A stretch of 37,682 nt of DNA from Octopus bimaculoides. Its lineage: Eukaryota. The DNA lies in NCBI RefSeq assembly GCF_001194135.2, contig NC_068981.1, positions 139,817,420 to 139,855,101 of the forward strand. Reading direction: 5' to 3'. How positions within the stretch are numbered: position 1 is the stretch's first letter; every line of letters starts with the position of its first letter. The notes beneath the pieces were generated by a model that was not told the origin of the DNA, did not search any database, and worked only from the letters and a program-made list of their open reading frames with translations. Position numbers and translations under genes: made by a program. Of the stretch, positions 388-32,855 are shown one piece after another.

Positions 388-1044
388 NNNNNNNNNNNNN
401 NNNNNNNNNNNNNNNNNNNNNNNNNNNNNNNNNNNNNNNNNNNNNNNNNNNNNNNNNNNNNNNNNNNNNNNNNNNNNNNNNNNNNNNNNNNNNNNNNNNN
501 NNNNNNNNNNNNNNNNNNNNNNNNNNNNNNNNNNNNNNNNNNNNNNNNNNNNNNNNNNNNNNNNNNNNNNNNNNNNNNNNNNNNNNNNNNNNNNNNNNNN
601 NNNNNNNNNNNNNNNNNNNNNNNNNNNNNNNNNNNNNNNNNNNNNNNNNNNNNNNNNNNNNNNNNNNNNNNNNNNNNNNNNNNNNNNNNNNNNNNNNNNN
701 NNNNNNNNNNNNNNNNNNNNNNNNNNNNNNNNNNNNNNNNNNNNNNNNNNNNNNNNNNNNNNNNNNNNNNNNNNNNNNNNNNNNNNNNNNNNNNNNNNNN
801 NNNNNNNNNNNNNNNNNNNNNNNNNNNNNNNNNNNNNNNNNNNNNNNNNNNNNNNNNNNNNNNNNNNNNNNNNNNNNNNNNNNNNNNNNNNNNNNNNNNN
901 NNNNNNNNNNNNNNNNNNNNNNNNNNNNNNNNNNNNNNNNNNNNNNNNNNNNNNNNNNNNNNNNNNNNNNNNNNNNNNNNNNNNNNNNNNNNNNNNNNNN
1001 NNNNNNNNNNNNNNNNNNNNNNNNNNNNNNNNNNNNNNNNNNNN
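388..1044. other. Assembly gap (N run). Other gaps: 8486-8987, 11207-11276, 16659-16789, 23150-23272, 24176-24626, 25733-26353
   Basis: N runs. All poly-X ORFs in the track are artefacts of these gaps. Confidence 1.
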
Positions 1045-7830: not shown

Positions 7831-8995
7831 TTTTCAGCTGTAGATCTCTTCCTCTTGTAGAATAGCGCACGAACCTGTCAAATGAGCGATGTACACGCAT
7901 GGAGCACATAAATAGAAAACGAGGTGATGAAAACAAAACTCGAATACCGGAGGTTGAGTAATATAGTTTTTTTTTTTTTGAGCTGAAAAGACTTCATAAC
8001 GATTACTCAGACTTTACAATTAACCTACAATCATACGGTCATGATTAATTAGAAAAATGCAATGATTTGTAAATATTTGTAAGAAGTGAAGAGGAAATTG
8101 TTTAGCAGCTCATCAAATAAAGCTGATTGATCAGGATATTATTACTATTATTATTTGTCGGATGAAATTCTGTTGACCGGAAAGGGGAAAAAGAAAACGT
8201 AAATATTACAAGCAAGTTAGAACTAAATTAAAAGCTGAAAAATATACCTCGTATATAGACGCGGAAATATGTAAAGTAAATATAACGAAGAAGAAAGGTC
8301 CTTTTAGATACCAAGTATATAACAAAACAGCCATGCTGACTGTGGTATTCGTTATGAAGCCCAGTACGTCCATAAAAGATATTATCTTCGAAAGAATACA
8401 GCACCTACTTTGGCTTTCGTGATATGTCAACATTAACTATGATGCAGTACTGGCTAATACATACATATATATATATATATATATANNNNNNNNNNNNNNN
8501 NNNNNNNNNNNNNNNNNNNNNNNNNNNNNNNNNNNNNNNNNNNNNNNNNNNNNNNNNNNNNNNNNNNNNNNNNNNNNNNNNNNNNNNNNNNNNNNNNNNN
8601 NNNNNNNNNNNNNNNNNNNNNNNNNNNNNNNNNNNNNNNNNNNNNNNNNNNNNNNNNNNNNNNNNNNNNNNNNNNNNNNNNNNNNNNNNNNNNNNNNNNN
8701 NNNNNNNNNNNNNNNNNNNNNNNNNNNNNNNNNNNNNNNNNNNNNNNNNNNNNNNNNNNNNNNNNNNNNNNNNNNNNNNNNNNNNNNNNNNNNNNNNNNN
8801 NNNNNNNNNNNNNNNNNNNNNNNNNNNNNNNNNNNNNNNNNNNNNNNNNNNNNNNNNNNNNNNNNNNNNNNNNNNNNNNNNNNNNNNNNNNNNNNNNNNN
8901 NNNNNNNNNNNNNNNNNNNNNNNNNNNNNNNNNNNNNNNNNNNNNNNNNNNNNNNNNNNNNNNNNNNNNNNNNNNNNNNNNNNNNNNTATATATA

Positions 8996-11104: not shown

Positions 11105-11276
11105 GTATGTATATACTTACACATACATACATATAGATGTGTAATTCTGAGTATATGTGTATATATGTGTGTATATATGTGTGTATATATATGTATGTAT
11201 ATATATNNNNNNNNNNNNNNNNNNNNNNNNNNNNNNNNNNNNNNNNNNNNNNNNNNNNNNNNNNNNNNNNNNNNNN

Positions 11277-16590: not shown

Positions 16591-16835
16591 CATACATACA
16601 CATACATATATATGTGTATGTGTGTATGCATATGTTTGTATATATATATATATATATANNNNNNNNNNNNNNNNNNNNNNNNNNNNNNNNNNNNNNNNNN
16701 NNNNNNNNNNNNNNNNNNNNNNNNNNNNNNNNNNNNNNNNNNNNNNNNNNNNNNNNNNNNNNNNNNNNNNNNNNNNNNNNNNNNNNNNNCATACATACAC
16801 ATACATATATATGTGTATGTGTGTATGAATATGTT

Positions 16836-16884
<49 letters not shown>

Positions 16885-16946
16885 CACATACATATATATG
16901 TGTATGTGTGTATGCATATGTTTGTATATATATATATATATATATA
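16545..16946. repeat. Compound microsatellite array with three copies of a near-palindromic ~50-bp unit, spanning a gap
   Basis: CATACATACACACATACATATATATGTGTATGTGTGTATG(C/A)ATATGTTTG at ~16587, ~16790 and ~16877, separated by (TA)n. Confidence 0.85.
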
Positions 16947-17577
16947 AAATCACGTATATATGTAACCAGAAGCACACACAAACACACACACATTAATCTA
17001 TATATATGATCCGGCATCTGTATTCGCTTATGTGCATGTGCATGTGCATGTGCATGTGCAAATGTTGTACAGCTAGAACGTAAGCATCGTACAGCGTGCG
17101 TTTCAGGAGAATCCCTATTCCAAAGTGTAAGACACTTCAAATTCTCATAAAACCCCTGGCAATAAAACACAGCAGGCAAATTATAGCATTCTATAAAACT
17201 GGCAACGCTAAAATTTATCTCAATACATCTTTTAACTAATATATTTATATGCATTTGAAGTTTGGGTTCAGTACTGTGCATAATTTTATGGATCCTCCGT
17301 CGTTCACAAACGAAACGTGATCAAAATTTAATCGTAAATCAATATGGTTTTATTTTACAGTTCAATATTTCTGAAATCAATAATATTTTCTTTCTGGAAT
17401 CCAATATTTCATTTAATTGATTGTACTGATGCTGAGAGTATTTTAAGGGCGATGCTGCAATATATAATGATGCAATGATTACTTATTAAGGTGATGATTA
17501 AAGCTTGGAATTTCTAAAAAGATATAAGATCAAATATTCGCAGAAAAAGTTTCTTTAATATTCCACACACACACACA

Positions 17578-17610
<33 letters not shown>

Positions 17611-18041
17611 GCTTACAGAAACGCACTAACACAAAAACAGTCGGTAACATGCATACATGCATGCATACATATGAAGACGTATGCATTTATACACATATAT
17701 CTCTACGTATGTGCTTGTGCGCGCGTGTGTGTATGTATGTTTGTGTATTAGTGTTCGTGTGAGTTGGTTTGTGTATATATTTACTTCATTAGGAAAGTTT
17801 GAATATGTCTCTTGCACTTACAACCACTGCAACTTCCACTGAAGATTGTCGTATCCCGAATTCTGTATGCAAATTCCTGTTCATGAGTAAAATCAGGCAA
17901 TAAAGAAATATGTTACACCCAAAGGGAGTTCGCAATTGCCCAATAAGCGTTTTGTTGTTTTATATAGAAAGAGCAGTGCTATTTATGGCATAAATTACAG
18001 TAAAAAATATATCGTAATTAAATTTCCCTTAACAATATATT

Positions 18042-18256
18042 CTTCTCTAATCTAAGCACAAGGCCGGAATTTTTTAGGGAAGGGGGATAGTCGATTAAAT
18101 CGACCCCAGTACGCAACTGGTACTTTATTTATCGACCCCGAAAGGATAATAGGCAAAGTTGACCTCGGCGGAATTTGAACTCAAAAGTTAAAGACAGACA
18201 AAATACCGCTAAGCGTTTCGCCTAGCGTGCTAACTTTTCTGCCAGCTCGCCGCCTT
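18042..18256 (-). mobile_element. tRNA-derived SINE, tail type B (copy B1)
   Basis: Minus strand: head AAGGCGGCGAGCTGGCAGAAAAGTTAGC, B-box-like GAGTTCAAATTCC, central GCCTATTATCCTTTCGGGGTCGATAAATAAAGTACCAG, tail ...CCGGCCTTGTGCTTAGATTAGAGAAGA. Confidence 0.85.
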
Positions 18257-18271
18257 TCTTCACAATATATT

Positions 18272-18503
18272 TATTTCTTTATTGCCCACATGGGGCTAAA
18301 CAAACAGGGGACAAACAAGGATAGACAAAGGGATTAAATCGATGACGTCGGCCCCAGTGCGTAACTTGTATATATTTAATAGACCCCGAAAGGATGAAAG
18401 GCAAAGTCGACCTCGGCAGAATTTTAACACAGAACGTAACGGCAGACGAAATACCGCTAAGAATTTCGCCCGGTGTGTTAGCGATTCTGCCAGCTCGCCG
18501 CCA
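18272..18503 (-). mobile_element. tRNA-derived SINE, tail type A, with an empty LINE target site
   Basis: Full head, centre and tail ending GCCCCATGTGGGCAATAAAGAAAT. Carries one uninterrupted GGTATTTCGTCT (plus-strand 18444-18455). Confidence 0.9.
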
Positions 18504-18721
18504 ATTCTTTTCTACTCTAGGCACAAGGCCCGAAAATTTGTGGGAAGGGGCCAGTCGATTAGATTGAGTCCAGTACGCAGCTGGTACTTAATTTATCAAC
18601 CCCGAAAAGATGATAGGCAAAGTCCACCTCGGCGGAATTTGAAAGCAGAACATAAAGACAGACGAAATATCGCTAAGCATTTCGCCTGGCGTACTAACGT
18701 CTCTGCTAGCTCGCAGCCTTT
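18504..18721 (-). mobile_element. tRNA-derived SINE, tail type B (copy B2)
   Basis: Same head and centre as B1; tail ...TTTCGGGCCTTGTGCCTAGAGTAGAAAAGAAT. Confidence 0.85.
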
Positions 18722-18764
18722 CTTCACAATATATTTACACACAAAAGGCGGCGAACAGGAATAA

Positions 18765-18997
18765 AAGGCGTGAGCTGGCAGAAACGTTAGCACGCCGGGC
18801 GAAATGCTTAGCAGTATTTCGTCTGCTGTAACGTTCTGAGTTCAAATTCCGCTGAAGTCAACTTTGCCTTTCTTCCTTTCGGGGTCGATAAATTAAGTAC
18901 CAGTTACGCACTGGGGTCGATGTAATCGACTTAGTCCCTTTGCTTGTCCCTGTTTGTCCCCTCTATGTTTAGCCCCTTGTGGGCAATAAATAAATAA
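18765..18997 (+). mobile_element. tRNA-derived SINE, tail type A
   Basis: A-box-like TGGCAGAAACG, B box GAGTTCAAATTCC, centre GCCTTTCTTCCTTTCGGGGTCGATAAATTAAGTACCAG, tail GCCCCTTGTGGGCAATAAATAAATAA. Confidence 0.9.
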
Positions 18998-19138
18998 GAA
19001 ACGTTAGCACGCCGGGCGAAATGTTTTGCGGTATTTCGTCTCCGTGAGTTTGGAATTATTGATAATTATTATTGGAGTGCGTCTGTATAGTAAGTGCAAG
19101 TTTCTGTTGACTGTTTTTGTTATTTCCTGTTATAATTA

Positions 19139-19450
19139 TTGTTCCTGTTAGTAAGGAAATTAAGCAGAAGGCAGAGGATAGTCGCGTTAAACAGCAAAAA
19201 TGACGATTTAATGAGAGAAATACAAGCGAAACAATCAGCCACTAGGATTGCAGAACTTTCTGATAAATATAAGAACTACGAGTTCTACGAAATAAATAAA
19301 AAGACTCACAATGTATTACTTAACACGTATAGAAAGTCGGTGTCGATGATGAGATTGGATTTTAATCAATCCATTTTTCAAGACTTGCTACATGCTACCC
19401 TATGTCAAGAAAAGGTGGAGAGTCCCTCTCCAAAGGACACCTCGGATTAA
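19139..19450 (+). pseudogene. Probable ORF1 C-terminal remnant of LINE copy 1
   Basis: Open frame ending 11 nt before the ORF2 ATG (19462). Assignment is by position only. Confidence 0.5.
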
Positions 19451-19461
19451 ATATGTAAGTA

Positions 19462-22220
19462 ATGTCTATTCACGTTGCTCGTGCAAATGTTCGTGGCCTG
19501 ATGTCTAGCTGGAAGCAAGGGCGCTTCCTAAATGACATCAGGTCAAGAAAATTGGATGTGATTGTTAAAACGGAAACCCGGGTGTAGGGGCTCCCCTCCT
19601 GAACGGCTGTGAGAAATATGTTTCTCCGAGTCGGGCTAGAGGTGTGGGCGGGGTGTTGGTCCTACTAAGAAGAAACCGGGTAGCCGAGAAAAAGTTGTCT
19701 TTTTCTGACCCAGAAGGTAGGTTGGTCGTTCTCGACCTGGCATTCAGTTGTGGCAAGATAATCAGGTTGGTTGCAGTTTATGCACCCAACGTAATGGGCC
19801 ACAAAGCGAATATTTTCGTGACCTGGTCAAGTTCCTGGCCACATCGCATTCGCTAGTACTGATAGAAGACTTTAACACAATATGTGACGCACACATAGAC
19901 TGTGTTGGCTCGAACATGAATAGAAAATGTAACCCTGGTTTACGAGATCTGCTAAGTCACATTCAGCTGGCAGATCCATATAGTTTGGAACACCCGAACA
20001 TTCCACAGCGGGCATGGTCAAATAGTAACGGGTCTTCCAGAACATATCTAGATAGGGTTTTCATTATAACAACAGATAAGTCCATAGCTAAGTGTTCACA
20101 GTTTTATCCAGTTAGCTAGAGTAATCACAAGATGGTCACCTGTAAGCTGACAGTAGATAAGTTGCATAGAGAGGGATCTAGATACTAGAAACTCAATACG
20201 TCCCTTTTGGCGATTGAGGAGTACAGAAAGCGGATCAAGATGTTAGTACAGAGAGGATTGAGAGGTATCATCATTAATAACAAATGGTAGTACGCCTTAA
20301 AAAGAGCCATAAAATATGAGTCTATTATGTTTAGCATAAGTTTAGCTAAGAAGTGGCATAGAATAAGAGATGGTCTAGTGAAAGAACTAGAAGAAGCCTG
20401 GAGGAGTGGTAATGCGGACCAAGTGAAGGAGAAGAGACTGGAGTTTAACCAGCATCTGTAAGCCCAACACATGAGCAGTATTGTCAGAGCTAAGTTACGT
20501 GGAGGAATCTAGGTCGCTGGATGGGCCAGAGTGGTGGAAGGTCGACAAGGAAATAGTTCCACTATGCGGTGTTTGACGAATCAAAATGGAGTCTTGGTAA
20601 ACGATCCCGAGGAAATGTGTGAGGCCTTTCAGGAGTACTTTGCCCAGCTGTTCGCGGCTGATGGCGGACGTGATAATGGGGGACTTTCTTGCCGAGGACT
20701 TTCTTCGAGGACTTTCTTGCCGAGCTGCCTTGCCTTTCGGGGTCGGATGCGGAGTCTTGTGAAGGGCCGATCACGCCTGTGAAGGTGATGGAGACTATGG
20801 CCAATTGTAAAGTGGATAAGTCGCCGGGACTTGATGGTTTTCCGTACGAGCTGTATAAATGTATGCCAGATTTGTTCGGGTACCTAATGGCTGACGTGTA
20901 CGCGAACTGGCAACAGAATGGGTTTATCCCAGATCTGTGCGCCGGGGAGTAATGACGTTAGTCAGAACAGATCCGGAAAAGGGGGACGTTTTAGATAACT
21001 TCAGGCCCATCACTCTGTTAAATGTAGAAGTGAAAAGTGTGCTTGCGTGGTTCGGCGGTGCTGGGCGCTGGACAGAGGGACTGGTTAACTTGCTGGGAGT
21101 CTGGTGTGGATCAGGCCTCCAAATAGAGAAGAACTGAATGGAAGTTTCGATCAGGGTGGCTAGAGTAGTCAAGTCTTGGCGGTGGCTATCCCTGAAAGAG
21201 ATGGTGGATGTGGCTAATGTCTTTATCGCATCAGTCTTTACCTACCACCTGACCGTCGTGCCCTGTCCGGGTTCGTGTTTGATCAGGTTGGAGAGACAGC
21301 ACTTAGGCTTTTTGTGGAAGGGCAGGTCGCCACTTGTGAAACGCTCTACCTGTTGTCAAAAGCCCTTAAAGAGAGGTTTCGGCATGACTTGGTTAATGAT
21401 CCGCAGGCATGCTTCGAAGTTGAGGCATCTCTGGATTCTCCTGGATAGTGAACGGGTGTGGTCTCCGCTAGCCAGACAAATGTTCCCCGAGTTCAAAATA
21501 TTTTGCGAACAGGAAGCCTGATGTTTTCGTAGACCGAGGTCGAGTGAATGGCATATAGAGTGCCGTAAGGCCCTCCTGTTATTCCAGCGCTCGGGCAAAG
21601 CCAGCGGTGGGGGTTCTACACGAATTTTATATAGTGGGTTGGTAGAGTCTGAATGTGATGATGGACGGGGGCGGCTCTAGGTCTCGGCTTTATTCAACTG
21701 GACAGCCTGTTCTATCGTACATACGGGTTGGGATCGTTGGACAACTTTTAAAAATCCTTGCCCTGGCAATGTTACAGAGGTGCCTTTGGTATAAGCTCGT
21801 AAGGCATGGTAAGCGTCAGTCTCCGACCTGTCCAGGATGTGGGGGAGACAGGGAAACCGTCCCTCACGCTTATGTCTAGTGTTCGGAGATATATGAAATG
21901 TGGGTTTTGTGGGTTTATGCTGAACACCTGTTGTCCTGCGAAATAAGAGTACAGCTGTCGACTGAGTCATTTATAAAAATTGACTCACCGGAAATTTTAA
22001 CAAATGAAAGTAAGAATTGTCTTCTCACGGTTGTAGCAATAGCGAAAGAGGCAGTATGAAAGGTTAGGATAAAAGGAATTAATACAGGCAACTTTATCTC
22101 CGGCCACGATTTACGATCATTTTTTACTTTCCATTTGAAAAGGAAGGTGTGGCTCGAGAAAAGGTGTCTGTCGGAGTGTGCATTTCAAAAGTGTTTTGCG
22201 TGCAAGGAACCGTGTGAATA
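19462..22220 (+). pseudogene. ORF2 (APE endonuclease, partial RT, CCHC) of LINE copy 1
   Basis: Motifs listed for copy 1. Many stops and frameshifts. The catalytic SDH is mutated to SNH, and the RT core (QGCPLSP, YADD region) is deleted near 21035-21063. Confidence 0.85.
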
Positions 22221-22954
22221 GTCTATAAAAGAAGCACAATAAAAAGGTACTAGCGATAGATCGGAGCTTGTGGGGTCGGAGCGTGGCCTGATCATCGCTA
22301 CATTTGTGTTGTCTCTGTATTGTTAATATCATTCGAATTTTTTATATGTTATATAATTTTTATATTCATATTTTATGTAAAATCATAACGTATTACTGAT
22401 CCCAATCAGTTGTGTTGTCCGTTTCTGAGTTTGGCCGCCTGTGGGCAATACAGAAATTGGTATTTCGTCTGCCGTAATACGCTCTGAGTTCAAATTCCGC
22501 CTATGTCGACTTTGCCGGTCAACTTTCCGGGGTCGATTAAATAAGTATCAGTTATGCACTGGGGTCGATGTAAACGACTTAATCCCTGTCCTCCTCTGTC
22601 CCCTGTATTTTTAGCCCTCTGTCGGCAATAAAAAAAGATATATATTAAAATTCTGCTTGTTAATCTGTAACTAAGCTAGCACGTGAATTACACTCTTTTG
22701 AGCAATTAGAATAAAAAAAAATTACAATTATTAATGCAACAAGAAGGCAGCGACTGGCAGAAACGTTAGCACGCCGGGCGAAATTATTAGTGGTATTTCG
22801 TCTGTGTGTCACCGGTTGAGGTGCTTAGCGGTGAGCGACTCCGTGAGATTGGATTGTTACTAGTTATTTGAGTGCGTCTGTACAGTAAGTGCAAGTTTCC
22901 ATTAACTGTTTTTGTGTGATAGTCTTCGTTTGAAAACTATCGTGTGTTTCCCCT

Positions 22955-23607
22955 ATGGGGGAAACAGTAATTGCTGGCAAGAAGCCGAATAATGTATCTT
23001 CGTCTGGCGAAGAGGAGTCAACCGGAGGAAAAAATATAGAAAATTTATTGTTTGGAGAAGTTTCGGATTCTTCTGAAGAGGAGTTTCCAAAGCTATCAAA
23101 TTGTACCGTTACAAGGAGGAACATAAATGTGAAAAACATACAAACAGAANNNNNNNNNNNNNNNNNNNNNNNNNNNNNNNNNNNNNNNNNNNNNNNNNNN
23201 NNNNNNNNNNNNNNNNNNNNNNNNNNNNNNNNNNNNNNNNNNNNNNNNNNNNNNNNNNNNNNNNNNNNNNNNACATATTAAAATACAAAGACATGCTAAA
23301 AATTCAAAACGGTGTTGTCAAAGTTCAACCACCGGAAGAATTATTATTAACAGAAAAAAAAAACCCAATTATTTTTAAAGTTTACTGCAAAAAAGGAAGG
23401 AAAATCGAGCGAGTGAGCGAAGAAAGAATTGAACAAGGTCTAAAGCCCATTTCGCAGGACATTACGTATCTAGCAAGCGGCAAAAAATTCGGTACCATTG
23501 AGGTACATTTTAAAAACATTGAAACTGCACAAGTGCACTCTGTAAAATCCTTGGAAACCGAGGATATAATTTTGATACCGATTTACAAAGGTCCCACCTC
23601 AAATTGA
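22955..23607 (+). pseudogene. ORF1 N-terminal part of LINE copy 2 (RRM-like), spanning a gap
   Basis: ATG at 22955 after a ~150-nt 5' UTR. The segment KFGTIEVHFKNIETAQ...LIPIYKG resembles the RRM-type ORF1 of Tx1/L2-like LINEs (recalled, not searched). Confidence 0.55.
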
Positions 23608-24680
23608 CCCAAAGTGGTTGATGGCTGCGGTCCTGGCAAAGAAGGTAGATGAGGTAAATATACTTCAAGCTATCGTCATCGAAAAACCATATTGGACAGG
23701 CCACACGGTCCACTTATTAAGTCACTTTCAGCTAGCAGACCCATATAGTTTGGAACACCCGAACACTCCACAGTGGACGTGGTCAAATAGTGACGGGTCT
23801 ACTTGAAAATATCTAGATCAGATTTTAATTAGAGAAACAGATAAGTCTATAGCTAAGTGTCCACAGTTTTTTCCAGTCAGCTACAGTGACCACAAGATGG
23901 TTACCTGTAAACTGACAATAGACAAGTTACATAGTCAGGGACCTGGCTACTGGAAACTCAATACGTCCCTTTTGGCGATTGAGGAATACAGAAAGCGGAT
24001 CAAGATGTTAATTCAGAGGGCATTGACAGGTACCATCATTAATAACAAATGGTGGTACGCCCTAAAAAGAGCCATCAAATATGAGTCTATTAGGTTTAGC
24101 ATAAGTTTAGCTAAGAAGGGACGTAGAATAGGAGATGGTATAGTTAAGGAACTAGAAGAAGCCTGGAGGACTGGCNNNNNNNNNNNNNNNNNNNNNNNNN
24201 NNNNNNNNNNNNNNNNNNNNNNNNNNNNNNNNNNNNNNNNNNNNNNNNNNNNNNNNNNNNNNNNNNNNNNNNNNNNNNNNNNNNNNNNNNNNNNNNNNNN
24301 NNNNNNNNNNNNNNNNNNNNNNNNNNNNNNNNNNNNNNNNNNNNNNNNNNNNNNNNNNNNNNNNNNNNNNNNNNNNNNNNNNNNNNNNNNNNNNNNNNNN
24401 NNNNNNNNNNNNNNNNNNNNNNNNNNNNNNNNNNNNNNNNNNNNNNNNNNNNNNNNNNNNNNNNNNNNNNNNNNNNNNNNNNNNNNNNNNNNNNNNNNNN
24501 NNNNNNNNNNNNNNNNNNNNNNNNNNNNNNNNNNNNNNNNNNNNNNNNNNNNNNNNNNNNNNNNNNNNNNNNNNNNNNNNNNNNNNNNNNNNNNNNNNNN
24601 NNNNNNNNNNNNNNNNNNNNNNNNNNAAAGCGGGTAGGTCGCCGGGACTTGATGGTCTTCCGTATGAGCTGTATAAATGT

Positions 24681-25601
24681 ATGCCAGACTTGTTCGGGCA
24701 TCTACTGGCTGACGTTTACGCGAACTGGCAACAGAATTGGTTTATCCCCAGATCTGTGCGCCGGGGAGTAGTGACGTTGGTCAGAAAGGACCCGGACAAG
24801 GGGGACGTTATAGAGAATGTCATGCCCATCACTCTGTTAAACGCAGAAGTGAAGATTTTGGCCAAGGTCTTAGCGAAAAGGTCGGCGCGTGTCGCGGATG
24901 GTATAGTCGGGGAAGCACAGACATGTGCCATCCCAGGCAGAACCATTCAGGATACCCTCCATCATATTCGCTATACCATAGAGAGGGTTGGTAATAAATC
25001 TGGCAAAGGTGGGGCACTGGTACATTTGGACCAGTCTAAAGCTTTTGATAGGGTTGACCATCGATACCTGGCGACTGTGCTTGCGCGATTCTGCTTGGGC
25101 CTTGGCTTCCTCAGGTGGTTTATTGCTTTGTACCACAACATTGACTCGATAGTTCGGGTGAACGGTTTCCTTTCGAAGCCGTTCTGTATCAGACGCTCGG
25201 TTCGTCAAGGATGTCCGCTCTCACCGCTTTTGTATGTGGTGGCTCTCGAGCCACTACTGCGGAGGTTGAATGGCATTCCGAGAGAACCAGGTCTAGAGGA
25301 GTTTGTTACGGCTTACGCGGATGAAATCACTATCACCGTAACCTCTGTAGCACGCCTACGTGAAGTGGGTAAGACTATTGAGGCTTACGAGGAGGTGGCA
25401 GGAGCAAAGATTAACCGGGAAAAGTCGGTCGGCTTAAAAATCAGCACTTGGTTTGGCAAGTCGATGCCTTCAGACAGCGCTGTTGGGCGCTGGACGGAGG
25501 GACCGGTTAGGTTGCTGGGAGTTTGGTTTGGTCCAGGCCTCCAGATAGAGAAGAACTGGACGGAGGTATTGAGCAGGGTGGCTGCAGTAGTCAAGACCTA
25601 G
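24681..25601 (+). pseudogene. Reverse transcriptase domain of LINE copy 2
   Basis: PITLLNAEVKILAKVLA, QTCAIPGRTIQD, LDQSKAFDRVDH, SVRQGCPLSPLLYVVALEP, YADEI (YADD variant), KINREKS, LLGVWFG. The frame ends in a premature stop at 25601. Confidence 0.92.
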
Positions 25602-26353
25602 TCTTGGCGGTGGCTATCTCTGAAAGGGAAGGCGGAGTGGCCAATGTGTTTATCGCATCGGTCATTACTTACCGCCTCACCGTCTTGCCTTGTCCGGATT
25701 CGTGGTTGATCAGGTTGGAGAGACAGCTCCTTNNNNNNNNNNNNNNNNNNNNNNNNNNNNNNNNNNNNNNNNNNNNNNNNNNNNNNNNNNNNNNNNNNNN
25801 NNNNNNNNNNNNNNNNNNNNNNNNNNNNNNNNNNNNNNNNNNNNNNNNNNNNNNNNNNNNNNNNNNNNNNNNNNNNNNNNNNNNNNNNNNNNNNNNNNNN
25901 NNNNNNNNNNNNNNNNNNNNNNNNNNNNNNNNNNNNNNNNNNNNNNNNNNNNNNNNNNNNNNNNNNNNNNNNNNNNNNNNNNNNNNNNNNNNNNNNNNNN
26001 NNNNNNNNNNNNNNNNNNNNNNNNNNNNNNNNNNNNNNNNNNNNNNNNNNNNNNNNNNNNNNNNNNNNNNNNNNNNNNNNNNNNNNNNNNNNNNNNNNNN
26101 NNNNNNNNNNNNNNNNNNNNNNNNNNNNNNNNNNNNNNNNNNNNNNNNNNNNNNNNNNNNNNNNNNNNNNNNNNNNNNNNNNNNNNNNNNNNNNNNNNNN
26201 NNNNNNNNNNNNNNNNNNNNNNNNNNNNNNNNNNNNNNNNNNNNNNNNNNNNNNNNNNNNNNNNNNNNNNNNNNNNNNNNNNNNNNNNNNNNNNNNNNNN
26301 NNNNNNNNNNNNNNNNNNNNNNNNNNNNNNNNNNNNNNNNNNNNNNNNNNNNN

Positions 26354-26801
26354 GGCAATGCTACAGAGGTGCCTTGCCCGTTTGGGATAAGCTTGCAAGA
26401 CACGGTAAGCGTCAGTCGCCGACCTGTCCAAGATGCAGGGGAGACAGGGAAACCGTCCCTCATGCTATTGTTCAGTGTCCGGAGATATCTGAAATGTGGG
26501 CTTATGCTGAGTACAGCTGTCGACTGAGTCAATTATAAAAATTGACCCACCGGGAGTTTTACCAAACGAAGGTAAGAATTGTTTTCTCACGGTTGTAGCA
26601 ATAGCGAAAGAGGTAGATTGGAAGACGAGGATAAAAGGAATTAAGACAGGCAACTTTATCTATGGCCACAATTTACGTTCCTTTTTTACTTTTCATTTGA
26701 AAAGGAAAGTGTGGCTGGAGAGGAGATGTTTGTCGGAGTGTATGTTCCAAAAGAGATGGAAGGATGTTGCACGAGTGTTGTGCGTGCAAGGAACCGTGTG
26801 A
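26354..26801 (+). pseudogene. ORF2 C-terminus of LINE copy 2 with CCHC zinc knuckle
   Basis: HGKRQSPTCPRCRGDRETVPHAIVQCP (C-x2-C-x8-H-x4-C). Terminal LKRKVWLERRCLSECMFQKRWKDVARVLCVQGTV*, with the stop at 26799-26801. Confidence 0.8.
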
Positions 26802-27222
26802 ATAGTCAGAAAAAAAAGAAAAAAAAAGGTGCCAGCGATAGATCGGGGCTTGTGTGGTCGGAGCGTGGCCTGATCATCGCTTCATTTGTGTTGTCTAACG
26901 TACTGTTGATATCATTCGATTTTTTATATTTTATAAAATTTTTAAAGTCATATTTATGTAAACCATTCGCATTACTGATCCCAATCAGTTGTTTTGTACC
27001 ATTCTATGTTTGGCCCCCTGTGGGCAATAAAGAAATTGGTATTTCGTCTGCCGCTACGTTCTGAGTTCAAATTTCGCCGAGGTCGACTTTGCCTTTCATC
27101 CTTTCGGGGTCGAGAAATTAAGTAGCAGTTACGCACTGGGGTCGATGTAATCGACCTAATCCGTTTGTCTGTCCTTGTTTGTCCCCTCTGTGTTTATCCC
27201 CTTGTGGGCAATAAAGACATAA

Positions 27223-27440
27223 GAAATGTTTCGCACTGAGCAAAACACTTAGCAGCAATTGAAATATTGCCAGAGTTAACTTTTCCTTTCATGCTTTCGG
27301 GGGTCTAGAAAATAAGTACCAGGTGAGTTCTGGGATAGATGTAATCGACTTACTCCTCCCTCGAAATAGACAGCTTCTGTTTTTTTTCCAGAACGGCTTT
27401 GAATTCCGAGTTCAAATTCCAACGAGGTCGATTTTGCATT
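27223..27440 (+). mobile_element. Older, diverged SINE of the same family plus a fragment
   Basis: GAAATGTTTCGCAC...ACTTAGCAGC, TTCCTTTCATGCTTTCGGGGGTCTAGAAAATAAGTACCAG, GATGTAATCGACTTAC. A further GAGTTCAAATTCCAACGAGGTCGATTTTGC at ~27407-27437. Confidence 0.7.
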
Positions 27441-29054
27441 TTACAATTGTGCCTATTATAGAAAAGACCGTTATTATTAGAAATAAAAATACTACTACTA
27501 ATAGTAGACATGTCACTCGTCGGGGCATTTTCTACTCGAGCAGGATAATTGGTTCAATGTGATATTGGCTTTGTATATATGTGAGGTGCATTTGTTTACA
27601 CGGCAGGGAGGGTTGCTTCTTCAGGGGATAAATCTTGCATTTTCTTTGGAATATCAAACAGGGCCAAAAATGTCAGTTGCAGTGTATTAGTGGAAATTAT
27701 AATAGACTGTAGGATAAAAAGAAAATTAAATTCACATCGTTGATGAATAAGAAATAACAAATCTATCCCACATAATCCGAAATGTTAAACTCCTGTGACG
27801 ACAAGGTAATGCAGAACATCGCGAACGAACTTCCGTATACGCGTAATCATGACCTTCAGTTTTTTCTTCACGTGCTGTTAAAAGAGAGTCTCTGACGGAG
27901 TGTCTCATGGCTTATTGACGGATCCTGAAGGAAGATGTATTCGGATTCCTTCCCCACCCAAAAATACAATATGAAAATTAGATTATCAGCCTAATTTATG
28001 TCTGCATTATGATGTTGGGGAGAAATAACGAATCTGAGGTAAGAAGGTCTACTAACAAATACGTACGGTCTTTTTTTTTTTTTTTTATAAATATACAAAC
28101 AATTCTGATTCTTGTATGATTTTTTTTTTAAATGAAATCTATTCAGATGAATATTGTTCAATTTTTCAAAAGATTTCTTTGTGATTCTTTTAAATTGAAT
28201 ATATTTTTAGATTGAACTCTTTTCATCAAATGTCACCTGAAATTCACCTCATCGGACATAGTATAAGAATAATCGATATACACATATACACAAAGCCACA
28301 CTCATACGCACACACAATCAGACGCCTACACAGATGCACACAAAGGCATAAATATACGCATTGTGTCTAACCATACATATGCAGAGAAATGGATAAAGGA
28401 AAAGCTGAATATATTTTTCTTTGAAGTTGGCCTTTAATATATTATACGAAATTTAGATTTGATACACATATACATATAGCCAATGAATTTTCCCTCCATG
28501 TGGTCGCTCGACATTTTAGAAATAGTATTCAAAACAAACAATTGCATCTTAAGATCAGAACGACACATTTATTAATATAGTTACCATTATACTGAAAAAT
28601 ACAGGGTCGTAATGTCTGGAAAAGTGTAGAGCAGAGATTTGAGCACATTTGACCTTAGACTAAACTACACCAAGAAGATATGTACTTATATATGCTATAT
28701 GAACAGTATTAAATTACGCAAACACACAATTCACGCACACACAGACACATAATATTGTAAATACAATTTACGATAAGGTGGACAATGCAGGAAGATAAAT
28801 GAAACATTGGCTTAACGCTTTAATAGAATGTGAATGTCTCGAAGTTTTGGATCTTATTCTTTTATCAGTAGAAGGGAGGAAAGAAATAGAGGTGGAATGA
28901 AAAACAGATATAATCATCTAAACGAACGGAAGAAGGGTTAGAAACTGGGTGGAAACAATGTATCATGATGTGGAATTATGAATCAACCAATCAGTCCACC
29001 ACGTGGTTGAACAACCAATCCAACCCAATCAGGATTCACATAGCGGATTGTAAT

Positions 29055-29586: not shown

Positions 29587-30000
29587 TGGTGGTTGTCTAC
29601 TCCTTATGTAGAGTTTGATCACCTCCTGTACCTACACTTTTGAACCATCATGGTATCTGATGTGGCTTCTTAAACCAGACAATGTTCTGAAAAGACACCC
29701 CACATAGATTGCACACCCGACTTGGACCACCAAGAGCTGCAGATAAGTTCTGATCTTTGTGGATCTTAAAATGTCTTTTGAGGCCTCCGTTAGATTTACA
29801 AACCTTCTGGCATACATTGCATTCAAAGGTTTGCACAGACATATAGGCAGAATAGTTGGTGGAGTTTCGTTTTCCATGGGTTCGCAAATGAGAGTTGAGT
29901 CCAGTAAAAGAAAGGCATGGTCTGTCACAAACTTTGCACACATAAAGGTCATTGTCATTCACCTTGTCGACCGTAACATTTTTCCTGAGATCTCTGTATA
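29585..30000 (-). mobile_element. Probable RTE-clade LINE 3' end encoding three C2H2 zinc fingers
   Basis: CKVCDRPCLSFTGLNSHLRTH, CNVCQKVCKSNGGLKRHFKIH and a frameshifted CNLC...FRTLSGLRSHIRYH*. A ~50-nt 3' UTR then runs into (TA)/(TG) microsatellite. No TGEKP linkers. Confidence 0.6.
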
Positions 30001-30024
30001 TATGCCTATGTGTGTTGATGTTTG

Positions 30025-30220
30025 TGTGTGTGTGTGTCTTTGTGTGCATGTTTGACAACGCCGTTTGGTTTGAATGTTTTCCCTTAAAGTAGAGCTTCGG
30101 TAAAAGAGACCGACAGAATAAGCACAGGGGTTCACTTGTTCGCCTAACCCTTCATTTACAGACCAAACCCAGCACAGTCGCAGTTCAATGCCTGAAGCGA
30201 GTAAAATAAAAAAAAAGGAT
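30025..30220 (+). mobile_element. Diverged 3' half of the microsatellite-bearing SINE family
   Basis: (TG)n, then GACAAC...TTCGGTAAAAGAGACCGACAGAATAAG...CCAGCACAGTCGCAGTTCAATGCCTGAAG and an A-rich tail. Confidence 0.55.
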
Positions 30221-32564
30221 ACGTCAATGAGAGAACGATAGAGTAAGAGAAGAAGAGAGACAAGGAGACGTGATAGCCTGTACACTATATATATATATAT
30301 ATATATTTATTTATACGTGCGCGCGTCTGTGTGCATGGATATGTATACATTTTTTATTTAAAATTTGACGCACAGCAGTATAGAAATACAATATATCAAT
30401 ATAATATAATCTGTGTTGCGAAGATTGAGAATGCTTGAAGGAGAACTTACTAAAGATGCGATGGGACCGATTGTAATATGAATCCCATTATGTACTGTAG
30501 ACACACTCTATCAGGGGAATTTTTAGTCTCTAGAAGATAGACATTACGCCATTAAGTTTGTTTATATGTTAAATGTTAAATCTGAGCGAATTACCTAACA
30601 TTATGATTTTGTTTTACGTAGACCCTCCTCGCCTTCATTGTTTCTTTTCCTCTGTCGCTCAGATACACATATTTACAAACGCACACATATGTGTGTCTGT
30701 ATATGTGACGTTGACAAGCAAGCTGTATTTAAAACATGGCTCTAAATAAATACATACGCACACAAAATCACACAGACTTAGGTATGTGTCTGTCTAAACA
30801 GAGGTTTGTACGTATGCGTACATACATAGCGTGACATTATATCCAATCTCATTTTTTAATGAAGATGCCATTAGTATAATATAATATTAAAAATGTGAAT
30901 AGATAAAAAATCAATAAGAATCTTTTGTATAGAATCTACTCCGTCTGAGCAAAGACAATAGTTTCCAAATCACTCGAGAACCTTTTCAGTATGTCGCATC
31001 TCACCAGATCTAAAGGGAATATTTTTTTTATTTTTCATTTTTATAACAAATAGTCATTCATATTGTAGTATATTTGCTGAAAGTTAACTGGTACTTGATT
31101 TGAGCGACCGCGATGGAATGGAAAGTAGTTTTGGCATGATTTCTTTAACGTCAAAACTGTGTCCCTTCTATTTAGGACATTGCATGAAACTACCCGCGAG
31201 ATGTTCAATCTTGTGGGTGGTACATATCCAAAATTAACCACGTTCAGCGCACAAAGGCCCATGCATGTAAGAAAGAATACAAATTTCTATCTTATGCATG
31301 GGACAGTACAAGGCCTCTGTTTATGAGCTTCTTAGAAATATCTTATTTCCAGAGACACATATTGTCTAATTCGAATGACGAAATTGATACCACTCTATAT
31401 TCTTCTATAGTACCTGTCTACCACTACTTGTATGTGTGTATCTCTATTCGGCATTTTATAACATAATCGAACAATAGGTCCCACTTCTGCTGGTGGTTTT
31501 CTCCAGGAACTCTGCGAGTATTGCCAATGTGGCCTTCTATCACCTTTTCAGATAATACTTTCTCAAGTCTCTTTCGGAGACAGTTGTTCAATTATTTTTA
31601 CAACCCTTGCAAGGGGACCGGCTTTTGCAAATCTTTTGCTATAACCGCTACTTATACTGCTGCTGTTATTGCCGGTGCTTCTAGAAAGCTACAAATGATG
31701 TGGCACTAGTAACGGTGATGATCATAGCAGTTGTATTTGAGTTGAGAAAATTTAGTTTATGGCTGTGATGCTGGTGATGTAGTTGTTGCTTGTCTATAGA
31801 ATAGTATGTGGAAAGATTTGACTGGTCATCGTAGTCACAGTGATGGAGACATCAGTGATAATGGTGTTATTTTTGTTATTTCTTTTCTCTCATTTTTTCC
31901 CTCGTTGTCGTTGTTGCTATTTTGGTTTTTGTCACTTTCACTCTCCCTTGAGAAAAAGTTCAGCCGGAAAAGCTTTTTGATAAAAATAACAAAATACTTG
32001 TCATTGACGGTCTTATAATTATCTTTATCATTGTTGTTGTTGACGGTGGTAGTGGTGCTGTTGCTGCTGCTATTGGTGGTGGTGACAAAATCATATGTTC
32101 CCCATGACTTAAAATGTTTTCGAGATAAGCAATAATGGCCTTAGAGCGATTGCTACCACATTTGACATGGCTATCTCCCACTGCTCCTCTCTTTTTAAAC
32201 GTCAATACTATTGACATATTTTATAAAAGATGTTGTTCTGATAACAGCTGTTGATAGGGGAATTACTTGTGTTTCCTTAATTAAGGAAAACGCTTGGAGT
32301 TTTTAGATGCCCTGTTTTCCAGATAATAATTTTAAGTAAAGTTAATAGAATTTTAAAATTCTAAATGAAAAATTTGGAAATAAAATAGAATAAAATACGA
32401 AATATAAGGTTGGCGTAACTAAGCTACCATAAGAATTAACGAGAAAAATAATAATAGTTTCTCGTTTAGATACATGACCAGTAGTTTTCAGGAAGCGGGT
32501 TATTGTATTAAATCGTCACCAGTACTTGAATGGTACCTTGTTTTTGTTGAATGAGAAAGGATGT

Positions 32565-32855
32565 AAGACGAAATTGACCTTTATAGGATTTGAACTCAGA
32601 ATAAGAAGGGCTGGAACTAAAAGCACAAAAAAGCTTTGTCTGATGCTCTGACGATTTACAGTTCGTTACATTAAAATTTTTTCTCTTATCATCTGCAATA
32701 ATTACTACAGACAGTATTATAATTGCCTGGAAAGATAAAAGGCAAAATTGATCTCTGTAAGATTTGGGCTCAGAATATAAGAAGCGGAAAGAAAAAAAAA
32801 ACAACGCAAACCATTTCGTCTGACATTCCGAACAGTTTGTAGAATCACCAGCCGT
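32565..32855 (-). mobile_element. Two highly diverged SINE head remnants (same family as the 18-27 kb cluster)
   Basis: GACCTTTATAGGATTTGAACTCAGAAT...GATGCTCTGACGATT and GATTTGGGCTCAGAAT...CATTTCGTCTGAC resemble the reverse complement of the SINE head and B box. Confidence 0.45.

What the first reader, a model, noticed from the sequence alone, without database searches (positions are those of the whole stretch)
18998..27222. Tx1-like LINE inserted twice at the same nucleotide of a SINE, with an identical 12-bp TSD
Seen: both LINE copies are flanked by GGTATTTCGTCT (19030-19041/22459-22470 and 22792-22803/27038-27049). Removing each LINE and one repeat restores an intact SINE. An unoccupied SINE nearby has the 12-mer only once (18444-18455), so it is a true TSD. 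The 5' junctions differ (copy 1 lacks the first 37 nt of copy 2), the host SINEs differ and the outer flanks are unrelated. This favours two independent insertions over a segmental duplication. Established: Tx1-clade APE LINEs are often sequence-specific (Xenopus Tx1L/Tx2L target transposons; other families target U2, 5S, tRNA arrays or microsatellites). Inference: this family targets a high-copy SINE. I do not recall such a system being described in cephalopods, but could not search.
Basis: partly seen in the sequence, partly recalled or inferred. Interest (0 to 1): 0.95.

Follow-up and report, generated by a model that had tools for sequence, protein, structure and literature searches.

The report
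LINE hits same SINE site twice
Two decayed copies of an L1/Tx1-type retrotransposon sit at exactly the same nucleotide of two different copies of a short repeat (SINE), which most likely means this retrotransposon family prefers that site, a known kind of behaviour with a new kind of target.

Summary
GGTATTTCGTCT flanks both LINE copies. Removing each LINE plus one repeat restores a SINE that aligns with four unoccupied copies nearby. The LINE has APE, RT and zf-RVT domains, and its closest solved relative is human L1 ORF2p. I could not test whether it belongs to the Tx1 clade.

Three new results favour separate retrotransposition events over a local DNA duplication:
- The two copies differ with dN/dS 0.36. 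Differences by codon position are 50:43:76. Part of their divergence therefore arose in active lineages.
- The two host SINEs share no special similarity, and their outer flanks are unrelated.
- The "extra" 37 nt at the 5' end of copy 2 is a diverged copy of the SINE head. It ends exactly at the insertion point, as expected if copy 2's parent sat at the same SINE site.

The last ~45 nt of the LINE also resemble the SINE's 3' tail, so the LINE is probably the SINE's partner.

The limit is sample size: two insertions, plus one inferred. No collection I could reach holds this genome, so the family-wide flank census was impossible. Two related LINEs (about 60% amino-acid identity) have non-SINE 3' flanks.

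Verdict: probably a new site-preferring member of a known class. Moderate interest, unproven.

The parts
18089..18257 (-). Unoccupied SINE copy A, of the subfamily with the other 3' tail. Its target 12-mer has one mismatch (GGTATTTTGTCT, 18196-18207).
18273..18496 (-). Unoccupied SINE copy B, with the GTGGGCAATAAAG tail. The exact 12-mer occurs once (18444-18455): this is the empty site.
18553..18721 (-). Unoccupied SINE copy C, of the other tail subfamily. Its 12-mer has one mismatch (18660-18671).
18757..18995 (+). Unoccupied SINE copy D, with the GTGGGCAATAAA tail. Its 12-mer has one mismatch (18813-18824). It abuts the head of host SINE 1.
18998..19041 (+). Head of host SINE 1. It lacks about the first 15 nt of the SINE and ends in the 5' copy of the duplication (19030-19041).
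19042..22458 (+). LINE copy 1, 3417 nt, no gaps. ORF2 starts at 19462 (MSIHVARANVRGL..., APE) and stops at 22215-22217, followed by a 3' UTR of about 240 nt ending ...CCTGTGGGCAATACAGAAATT. It has many stops and frameshifts. The RT core (ORF2 aa ~530-733) is deleted at about 21035-21045, and the N-terminal part of ORF1 is absent.
22459..22637 (+). 3' part of host SINE 1. It starts with the 3' copy of the duplication (22459-22470) and ends in the tail GTCGGCAATAAAAAAAG.
22638..22745 (.). Unique AT-rich spacer between the two SINE-LINE-SINE units. Nothing similar lies after unit 2 or before unit 1.
22746..22803 (+). Head of host SINE 2, full length from SINE nt 1. It ends in the 5' copy of the duplication (22792-22803).
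22804..22840 (+). 5' leader present only in copy 2: GTGTGTCACCGGTTGAGGTGCTTAGCGGTGAGCGACT. It is a diverged copy of the SINE head segment that ends at the insertion point, and it contains the exact consensus 11-mer TGCTTAGCGGT.
22804..27037 (+). LINE copy 2, 4234 positions including 1195 N in three gaps (23150-23272, 24176-24626, 25733-26353). It carries an ORF1-like ORF (22955-23607), the C-terminal half of APE plus linker (23714-24175), an intact 306-aa RT ORF (24681-25601), a zf-RVT C-terminus (26356-26801) and a 3' UTR ending ...CCTGTGGGCAATAAAGAAATT. The N-terminal half of APE is absent.
27038..27222 (+). 3' part of host SINE 2. It starts with the 3' copy of the duplication (27038-27049) and ends in the tail GTGGGCAATAAAGACAT.
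26993..27037 (+). 3' tail of the LINE, 86% identical to the SINE 3' tail over 44 nt. The same motif lies at 22414-22458 in copy 1. It is the presumed recognition element shared by the LINE and its partner SINE.

Best explanation
A family of APE-type LINEs of the L1 group, probably what repeat annotators call L1-Tx1, integrates preferentially at one position of a ~230-nt SINE. The position is after consensus nt 58, in the same orientation as the SINE, with duplication of nt 47-58 (GGTATTTCGTCT).

Shown: two different SINE copies in the window are occupied at that nucleotide with the same duplication, and the two LINE copies diverged partly under protein-level selection.

Inferred:
- The element's endonuclease nicks the bottom strand between ...TAGC and GGTATTT and the top strand 12 nt downstream. 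The sequences at the two nicks are top GTCT^GCCG and bottom TACC^GCTA.
- Target-primed reverse transcription starts from the conserved 3' tail.
- Source copies are themselves lodged in SINEs and are transcribed from inside or upstream of the SINE head. The RNA can therefore carry a SINE-derived 5' leader, as copy 2 does. That leader can help form a precise 5' junction by homology with the new target, as copy 1 would show.

The SINE carries the LINE's 3' tail, so it is probably mobilised by this LINE lineage. Insertion falls between the SINE's A-box-like and B-box-like motifs. Neither motif nor any tRNA origin was confirmed, so any effect on SINE transcription is conjecture.
For: Same site, same orientation and identical 12-bp duplication in two SINEs. 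Four neighbouring SINEs are empty at that site.

The outer flanks are unrelated. The 108-bp spacer after unit 1 is not repeated after unit 2 or before unit 1.

The host SINE 3' parts are 82.9% identical to each other. Host 2 is closer to the unoccupied copies D (88.4%) and B (86.2%). I saw no shared derived substitutions by eye.

Over 428 aligned codons, dN/dS between the copies is 0.36 (bootstrap 0.26-0.52). Differences by codon position are 50:43:76 (chi-square p=0.005). A permutation that keeps the substitution spectrum gives 0.67 +/- 0.12, and 0 of 1000 permutations are as low as observed. A dead insert copied at the DNA level should differ neutrally.

The leader of copy 2 aligns, anchored at the junction, to the SINE head with score 9, against -3.4 +/- 3.0 for shuffles. 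5 of 20000 shuffles and 0 of 1428 real 37-mers from the window reach that score. The same inference, a 5' extension derived from the master copy's target, was made for crocodilian SINEU-2B in Mariner-N4_AMi (PMC4494074).

Host SINE 2 starts at SINE nt 1. This fits a normal SINE that was hit later.

Tx1-clade families are known to target other transposons (PMC4494074), and L1-Tx1 is the only L1-group class listed for Octopus vulgaris (PMC13282606).
Against: Only two observed insertions, and they lie 108 bp apart. That proximity is itself unlikely for independent hits unless occupancy of this SINE is high.

The family-wide census could not be done. No same-family protein or DNA was found in any reachable collection.

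Two related LINEs (60-62% aa identity in the C-terminal region, same 3' tail motif) have 3' flanks unrelated to the SINE.

If this LINE mobilises the SINE, a strictly site-specific machinery should also pile SINEs into that site. None of the six SINEs shows this.

The selection signal is moderate. About two thirds of the codons come from contigs of copy 2 that are placed by scaffolding only. The C-terminal block on the junction contig alone gives 16:12:25.

UTR divergence (12.9%) is lower than the synonymous divergence.

The leader test was framed after I saw the pattern. Unanchored local alignments of the leader to the SINE are weaker: 26 of 5000 shuffles of the 37 nt, and 116 of 3000 shuffles of the first 110 nt, reach the observed score.
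Confidence: 0.6

Rival explanations
1. There was one original LINE insertion into a SINE, and the whole SINE-LINE-SINE composite was then retrotransposed as a unit. The RNA would start at or upstream of the SINE head and read through the LINE's own end to the SINE tail, which the LINE's reverse transcriptase also recognises. The identical junctions and 12-mer are then inherited, not re-created.
For: The unit boundaries coincide exactly with SINE ends and the outer flanks are unrelated. The SINE tail resembles the LINE tail, so priming at the SINE tail is conceivable. Unit 1 begins about 15 nt into the SINE, as a 5'-truncated retrocopy would. dN/dS below 1 is compatible if the composites were active masters.
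Against: The insertion separates the SINE's A-box-like and B-box-like motifs by 3.4-4.2 kb, and the LINE contains T-runs (for example 'ctgtttttgt' in the 5' UTR), so pol III could not make the RNA. A pol II read-through RNA would normally carry sequence from upstream of the SINE, yet unit 2 starts at SINE nt 1. The two SINE parts share no derived substitutions. It does not explain why copy 2 carries a second, older SINE-head fragment ending at the same junction.
Confidence: 0.15
2. A DNA-level event produced the second copy from a single insertion. This could be a local duplication, unequal crossing-over between neighbouring SINEs, or ectopic gene conversion from the occupied SINE into the adjacent empty one. 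Later deletions produced the structural differences.
For: The two units are adjacent, in the same orientation, in a SINE cluster. LINE identity (79-89%) is similar to host-SINE identity (83-91%). The 37-nt difference could be a slippage deletion between the SINE head and the SINE-like leader, which form an imperfect direct repeat ending in CGTCT/CGACT.
Against: Differences between the copies are not neutral: dN/dS is 0.36, with a third-position excess at p=0.005 and 0 of 1000 neutral permutations as low. The spacer is not duplicated on either side. Host 2 is closer to other SINEs than to host 1. Three different large internal deletions would have to follow.
Confidence: 0.13
3. Assembly artefact. 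Copy 2 is stitched from four contigs, and its ends or internal pieces belong to other genomic copies of the family or to a misplaced duplicate of copy 1.
For: There are three N gaps inside copy 2, and repeats are the classic cause of mis-scaffolding.
Against: The 5' junction of copy 2 is on the same gap-free contig as all of copy 1 (16790-23149). The contigs are colinear with copy 1 and with a related ORF2. The copies are 11-21% divergent with different deletions, so they are not a collapsed or duplicated haplotype. Even if the ends came from different loci, each junction would still be a LINE end abutting the same SINE nucleotide.
Confidence: 0.04
4. Two independent insertions by a non-specific LINE landed at the same nucleotide by chance.
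For: None beyond SINE abundance.
Against: Given that both are in this SINE, the chance of the same position of ~230, the same orientation and the same duplication length is about 1/230 x 1/2, before allowing for the SINE's share of the genome (my own arithmetic).
Confidence: 0.01

Closest known systems
Crocodilian Tx1-Mar LINEs and SINEU elements inserted into the Mariner-N4_AMi transposon (Kojima 2015, PMC4494074)
   Same: An APE LINE of the L1/Tx1 group preferentially inserted at a defined position and orientation of another interspersed repeat. A short retroposon depends on the same machinery. Some elements carry 5' extensions derived from the target of the master copy or from small-RNA heads.
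   Different: There the target is a DNA transposon, and SINE and LINE share the target preference. Here the target is the SINE itself, and the SINEs in the window are not piled into the site. There the preference rests on dozens of copies, here on two.
Xenopus Tx1L / Tx2L inserted into Tx1D / Tx2D transposons (Christensen et al. 2000, cited in PMC4494074)
   Same: A LINE that lives inside copies of another mobile element at one specific sequence. The endonuclease has been shown to be site-specific.
   Different: The target is a piggyBac-type DNA transposon. The biochemical proof exists for Tx1L and not here. Whether the octopus-like element belongs to the same clade is untested.
Keno (U2 snRNA), Mutsu (5S rRNA), Dewa (tRNA-Leu spacer), Kibi/Koshi (microsatellites): Tx1-clade target-specific families (PMC4494074, PMC3706591)
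   Same: Sequence-specific integration into multicopy sequences that serve as safe havens.
   Different: Those targets are genes or microsatellites, not a retroposon. No tRNA similarity was detectable in this SINE head, so a tRNA-gene-derived specificity cannot be claimed.
R1/R2 of arthropod rDNA
   Same: Constant target-site duplication or deletion, co-transcription with the target, and use of target-derived RNA ends for precise junctions (my own knowledge). The 5' leader of copy 2 suggests a similar co-transcription.
   Different: These belong to different clades. R2 uses a restriction-like endonuclease. The target is a single conserved gene family.
Stringent LINE-SINE pairs sharing a 3' tail (Ohshima and Okada; PMC4176376, title and abstract only, seen)
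   Same: The last ~45 nt of the LINE are 86% identical to the SINE tail. The tail motif is conserved in related LINE families at only ~65% overall DNA identity.
   Different: In the classical pairs the LINE is not reported to insert into its partner SINE at a fixed site.

Membership tests
L1-group APE LINE (L1/Tx1) | ORF2 with N-terminal apurinic-type endonuclease, central RT and a C-terminal cysteine-rich domain | tested here: met
   RVT_1 8.7e-25 and zf-RVT 1.9e-7 on window ORFs. A related full-length ORF2 with Exo_endo_phos+RVT_1+zf-RVT aligns to copy 1 from aa 66. Copy 1 begins MSIHVARANVRGL..TET, like that protein's N-terminus. The best solved relative is human L1 ORF2p, 2e-24 for RT alone, against 1e-13 for R2.
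Tx1 clade | The RT domain groups with Tx1L/Keno/Kibi and the like, rather than with L1, in an RT phylogeny (RTclass1, Repbase references) | not testable with these tools
   No reference Tx1 or L1 RT set was available, and hits in the protein collection carry no clade names. The only support is circumstantial: L1-Tx1 is the only L1-group class listed for O. vulgaris (PMC13282606).
Target-specific LINE (criterion of Kojima 2015: one kind of sequence in more than 20% of flanks of a family) | Many independent copies flanked by the same target at the same position | tested here: inconclusive
   2 of 2 copies in the window, plus one inferred parental site. No further family copies could be obtained. 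Two related families have other 3' flanks.
Target-specific LINE | The endonuclease cleaves the target sequence specifically in vitro | not testable with these tools
   Requires expression of the APE domain and nicking assays.
True target-site duplication (as opposed to an internal repeat of the host) | The unoccupied target carries the duplicated sequence once | tested here: met
   SINE B has the exact 12-mer once. A, C and D each have it once with one mismatch.
tRNA-derived SINE (SINE2) | Head recognisably derived from a tRNA, with A and B boxes | tested here: not met
   ARAGORN finds no tRNA in the window. Rfam at E<=10 gives no tRNA match on 17900-19100. Only B-box-like GAGTTCAAATTCC and a weak A-box-like motif are visible by eye. 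The head may be too diverged.
SINE mobilised by a partner LINE | 3' tail shared with a LINE | tested here: met
   44-nt tail match at 86%, E 7.5e-9 and 1.4e-7. The tail motif is also present in related LINEs L006 and L008.

The most novel reading that the evidence does not exclude
The LINE homes specifically into the very SINE that parasitises it (shared 3' tail). It uses SINE copies as a genome-wide safe haven. Source copies are transcribed from within the host SINE, so the RNA carries SINE sequence at its ends, and that sequence guides precise re-insertion into other SINE copies. Each hit falls between the SINE's putative A and B promoter boxes and might inactivate that SINE copy.
Probability: 0.25. 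Interest if true: 0.65.

Novelty: new member of a known kind. Interest (0 to 1): 0.45.

Why it matters
Sequence-specific LINEs are natural examples of targeted integration and of how mobile elements avoid harming the host. Tx1-type families are known to choose snRNA and rRNA genes, microsatellites, DNA transposons and LTR elements. None of the papers I could search reports a SINE as the target, still less the LINE's own partner SINE. Octopus-type genomes are unusually rich in SINEs. A LINE that nests in them would shape how these repeats cluster and decay. It would also give a simple system for studying target recognition: a 12-bp duplication at a defined site. With two copies in one window this remains a lead, not a result.

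Tried and rejected
Fetching more copies of the family:
- Protein search with the intact RT. The best hits are only ~50% identical, from cuttlefish and unnamed ENA assemblies. No same-family proteins.
- Protein search with a 156-aa C-terminal composite of both copies. It gave only two Logan proteins at 60-62% identity. Their contigs gave 3' ends of related families, not of this one.
- Exact look-up of the window's 306-aa RT ORF. Not on record.
- Metagenome scan with a LINE-specific 3' UTR 20-mer.
- Viral and prokaryote genome collections scanned with a 25-nt SINE core. Nothing found, so no host DNA is present there.

Related loci L002 and L003: too distant (~65% DNA identity over short stretches), and they contain no SINE or 12-mer.

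Identifying the species with a zinc-finger-like ORF: one unnamed hit at 55% identity.

tRNA origin of the SINE head: no support. The Rfam MIR949 hit is only the hairpin formed by the inverted heads of SINEs C and D.

Extended homology between the LINE 5' UTR beyond the leader and the SINE: not significant.

Outer target-site duplications as a way to separate 'LINE into SINE' from 'composite retrotransposed': rejected, because both models predict the same outer junctions.

Host-SINE divergence against LINE divergence as a test for duplication: uninformative, because all values lie at 83-91%.


Full report
**1. What is there**

The 12-mer GGTATTTCGTCT occurs exactly five times in the window and three more times with one mismatch. 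About 0.18 matches are expected by chance. All eight occurrences lie in copies of one ~230-nt SINE.

Four of these SINE copies are uninterrupted:
- A 18089-18257 (-)
- B 18273-18496 (-)
- C 18553-18721 (-)
- D 18757-18995 (+)

Copies B and D and the two interrupted copies end in ...CCCCTTGTGGGCAATAAAG. Copies A and C carry a different tail.

Two copies are split exactly after the 12-mer, which is consensus nt 47-58:
- Host 1: head 18998-19041, 3' part 22459-22637.
- Host 2: head 22746-22803, 3' part 27038-27222.

In alignment A1 the heads end in the 12-mer and the 3' parts begin with it. Removing the insert and one repeat therefore restores a normal SINE. The 12-mer is a genuine target-site duplication. 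For copy 2 it could be 13 bp.

**2. The inserts**

The inserts are two copies of one LINE family. Copy 1 (19042-22458) is gap-free. Copy 2 (22804-27037) contains three N runs.

The copies align in five colinear blocks at 79-89% identity. Their structures differ:
- Copy 1 lacks the RT core and the ORF1-like region that copy 2 has.
- Copy 2 lacks the N-terminal half of the endonuclease.
- After a shared ~75-nt 5' UTR, about 800 nt are not alignable between them.

Domain evidence:
- Pfam finds RVT_1 and zf-RVT.
- A full-length relative from an unnamed ENA assembly (Exo_endo_phos + RVT_1 + zf-RVT, 1155 aa) aligns along both copies.
- ORF2 of copy 1 starts at 19462 with an APE-type N-terminus.
- The nearest solved structure is human L1 ORF2p, well ahead of R2.

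The element is therefore an APE LINE of the L1 group. I could not test whether it is Tx1 rather than L1, because no reference RT set was available. The only hint is that L1-Tx1 is the sole L1-group class listed in octopus repeat annotations (PMC13282606; PMC8967140).

**3. The gaps**

Copy 1 serves as a ruler for two of the gaps:

| Gap in copy 2 | Flanks map to copy 1 | Missing by ruler | N written |
|---|---|---|---|
| 24176-24626 | 20409 / 20809 | 399 nt | 451 |
| 25733-26353 | 21300 / 21765 | 464 nt | 621 |

The related ORF2 is matched in the order aa 168-319, 455-795 and 982-1137. Order and orientation are coherent. Frame and true length across the gaps are unknowable. The first gap lies in a region absent from copy 1.

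The 5' junction of copy 2 lies on the same contig as all of copy 1. Its 3' junction lies on the next large contig. If the scaffolding were wrong, the two junctions would come from different loci. Each would still be a LINE end at the same SINE nucleotide.

**4. One event or several?**

A simple tandem duplication is excluded. The 108-bp spacer after unit 1 is repeated neither after unit 2 nor before unit 1.

The host SINEs are not each other's closest relatives. Their 3' parts are 82.9% identical, whereas host 2 is 88.4% identical to D and 86.2% to B. I saw no shared derived substitutions. Because everything here is 10-20% diverged, this is only weak evidence.

A stronger test is the pattern of differences between the two LINE copies. 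I defined 428 codons from copy 2's frames, which were set independently of copy 1.
- dN/dS is 0.36, with a bootstrap interval of 0.26-0.52.
- Differences fall 50:43:76 on codon positions 1:2:3 (p=0.005).
- Re-dealing the same substitutions at random gives 0.67 +/- 0.12, and none of 1000 trials was as low as observed.

About half of the divergence therefore accumulated while the protein was under selection, that is, in active element lineages. This is not expected if a dead insert was copied by duplication or local gene conversion.

Caveats:
- About two thirds of these codons lie on contigs that are placed by scaffolding only.
- The C-terminal block on the junction contig alone shows 16:12:25.
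- The UTRs are less diverged (12.9%) than synonymous sites. This may reflect their own constraint, or some inflation of dS.

**5. The 37 nt**

These 37 nt (22804-22840) are in fact a diverged copy of the SINE head segment that ends at the insertion point:
- They contain the exact consensus 11-mer TGCTTAGCGGT.
- They end ...CGACT, where the SINE has ...CGTCT.
- They are followed by the same CCGTGAG that follows the SINE in copy 1.

Anchored at the junction, the alignment scores 9, against -3.4 +/- 3.0 for shuffles. 5 of 20000 shuffles and 0 of 1428 real 37-mers from the window reach it. Downstream LINE sequence shows no SINE similarity. The leader matches the SINE consensus better than it matches host 2's own head, so it is not a fresh duplication of host 2.

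The simplest reading is 5' transduction. The parent of copy 2 sat at the same place in another SINE, and its RNA began inside that SINE head. Kojima used the same reasoning for a SINEU-2B 5' extension resembling Mariner-N4_AMi (PMC4494074).

This cuts two ways. It adds a third, inferred use of the site. I framed the test after seeing the pattern, and unanchored alignments of the leader are weaker: 26 of 5000 shuffles of the 37 nt, and 116 of 3000 shuffles of the first 110 nt, reach the observed score.

**6.

The last ~45 nt of the LINE are 86% identical to the SINE's 3' tail. The same tail motif is kept in two related LINE families that are only ~65% identical in DNA (L006, L008). This is the signature of a stringent LINE and its partner SINE.

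It raises a difficulty. If this LINE's machinery moves the SINE, strict site specificity should also stack SINEs into nt 58, and none of the six SINEs shows that. Three explanations are possible:
- The preference is not strict.
- The SINE was spread by a non-specific sister lineage.
- Precision comes partly from SINE-derived RNA ends that only SINE-embedded LINE transcripts carry.

The two related LINEs have 3' flanks unrelated to the SINE. This shows at least that the target is not a property of the whole lineage.

**7. Mechanism proposed**

Shown:
- The positions of the two staggered breaks, 12 nt apart, with the LINE's 3' end next to the upstream break.
- The same breaks were used twice.

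Inferred:
- The APE nicks the bottom strand at TACC^GCTA and the top strand at GTCT^GCCG. The similarity of the two sites is my own observation on one target.
- Reverse transcription is primed from the conserved tail.
- The 5' end is joined either by homology between a SINE-derived leader and the target head (copy 1, seamless) or by end-joining of the full leader (copy 2).

The insertion lies between the SINE's A-box-like and B-box-like motifs. The tRNA origin of the head could not be confirmed.

**8. Rivals**

- Composite retrotransposition of SINE-LINE-SINE (0.15) explains the exact SINE boundaries. It needs an RNA that starts at SINE nt 1 without pol III, and it does not explain the leader.
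- DNA-level duplication or conversion (0.13) explains the adjacency but not the selection signature or the missing spacer copy.
- Assembly error (0.04) and chance (0.01) are minor.

The adjacency of the two units remains the most awkward fact for independent insertion.

**9. What could not be done**

The decisive flank census was not possible. No collection within reach contains this genome or this family. The literature searches found target-specific Tx1 families aimed at snRNA and rRNA genes, a tRNA spacer, microsatellites, DNA transposons and LTR elements. They found no LINE aimed at a SINE, and nothing on target choice in cephalopods. The library is incomplete, so this is absence of evidence only.

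**10. Verdict**

The most likely explanation (about 0.6) is recurrent, site-preferential integration of an L1/Tx1-type LINE into its partner SINE. That would be a new member of the known class of target-specific LINEs, with a new kind of target. It is worth a genome-wide check, which is straightforward for anyone who holds the assembly.

Noticed in passing
window 18679-18805: The heads of SINE C (-) and SINE D (+) face each other and form a ~127-nt hairpin. Rfam scores it as plant MIR949 (34 bits against a gathering score of 100, E=2e-4). This is a false positive caused by inverted SINEs.
   Followed up: yes
window 18030-18995: Four SINE copies are packed head-to-tail or inverted with almost no spacer, and host SINE 1 starts directly after the tail of SINE D. 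Copies A and C share an upstream stretch AAATATATTGTGAAGAAA that also resembles the end of A's own tail. New SINE copies seem to land preferentially at existing SINE tails.
   Followed up: partly
window 20681-20724: A 15-bp unit (GGACTTTCTTGCCGA) is repeated 3.1 times inside the coding region of LINE copy 1. It is a small tandem expansion in a decaying copy.
   Followed up: no
window 19121-19952 versus 22916-23717: After a shared ~75-nt 5' UTR, the two LINE copies have about 800 nt that do not align at all. Copy 1 has a 103-aa coiled-coil-looking ORF plus the N-terminal half of APE. Copy 2 has an acidic, RRM-looking ORF1. These are either complementary deletions of one longer element or different 5' modules.
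   Followed up: partly
window 27274-27441 and 32507-32601: There are fragments of a related SINE subfamily (central domain and B-box-like segment, 71-81% identity). One lies directly downstream of host SINE 2.
   Followed up: no
window 29648-30058 (-): A 136-aa ORF carries two or three C2H2 zinc-finger-like motifs (for example FECNVCQKVCKSNGGLKRHFKIH). Its only database relative is an unnamed 174-aa Logan protein at 55% identity.
   Followed up: partly
L006 1-1545, L007, L008 1-1083 (Logan contigs of SRR11869394 / SRR11869391): Related LINE 3' ends (60-62% aa identity in the C-terminal region) keep the tail motif ATGTTT..C..GTG.G.AATAAAGAA. They are followed by unrelated, non-SINE sequence. 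L008 has an internal deletion joining the C-terminal domain to the 3' UTR.
   Followed up: partly
window 388-1044, 8486-8987, 11207-11276, 16659-16789: The other assembly gaps are all bordered by (CA)n, (TA)n or (TATG)n microsatellites. The window as a whole is very rich in such repeats.
   Followed up: no
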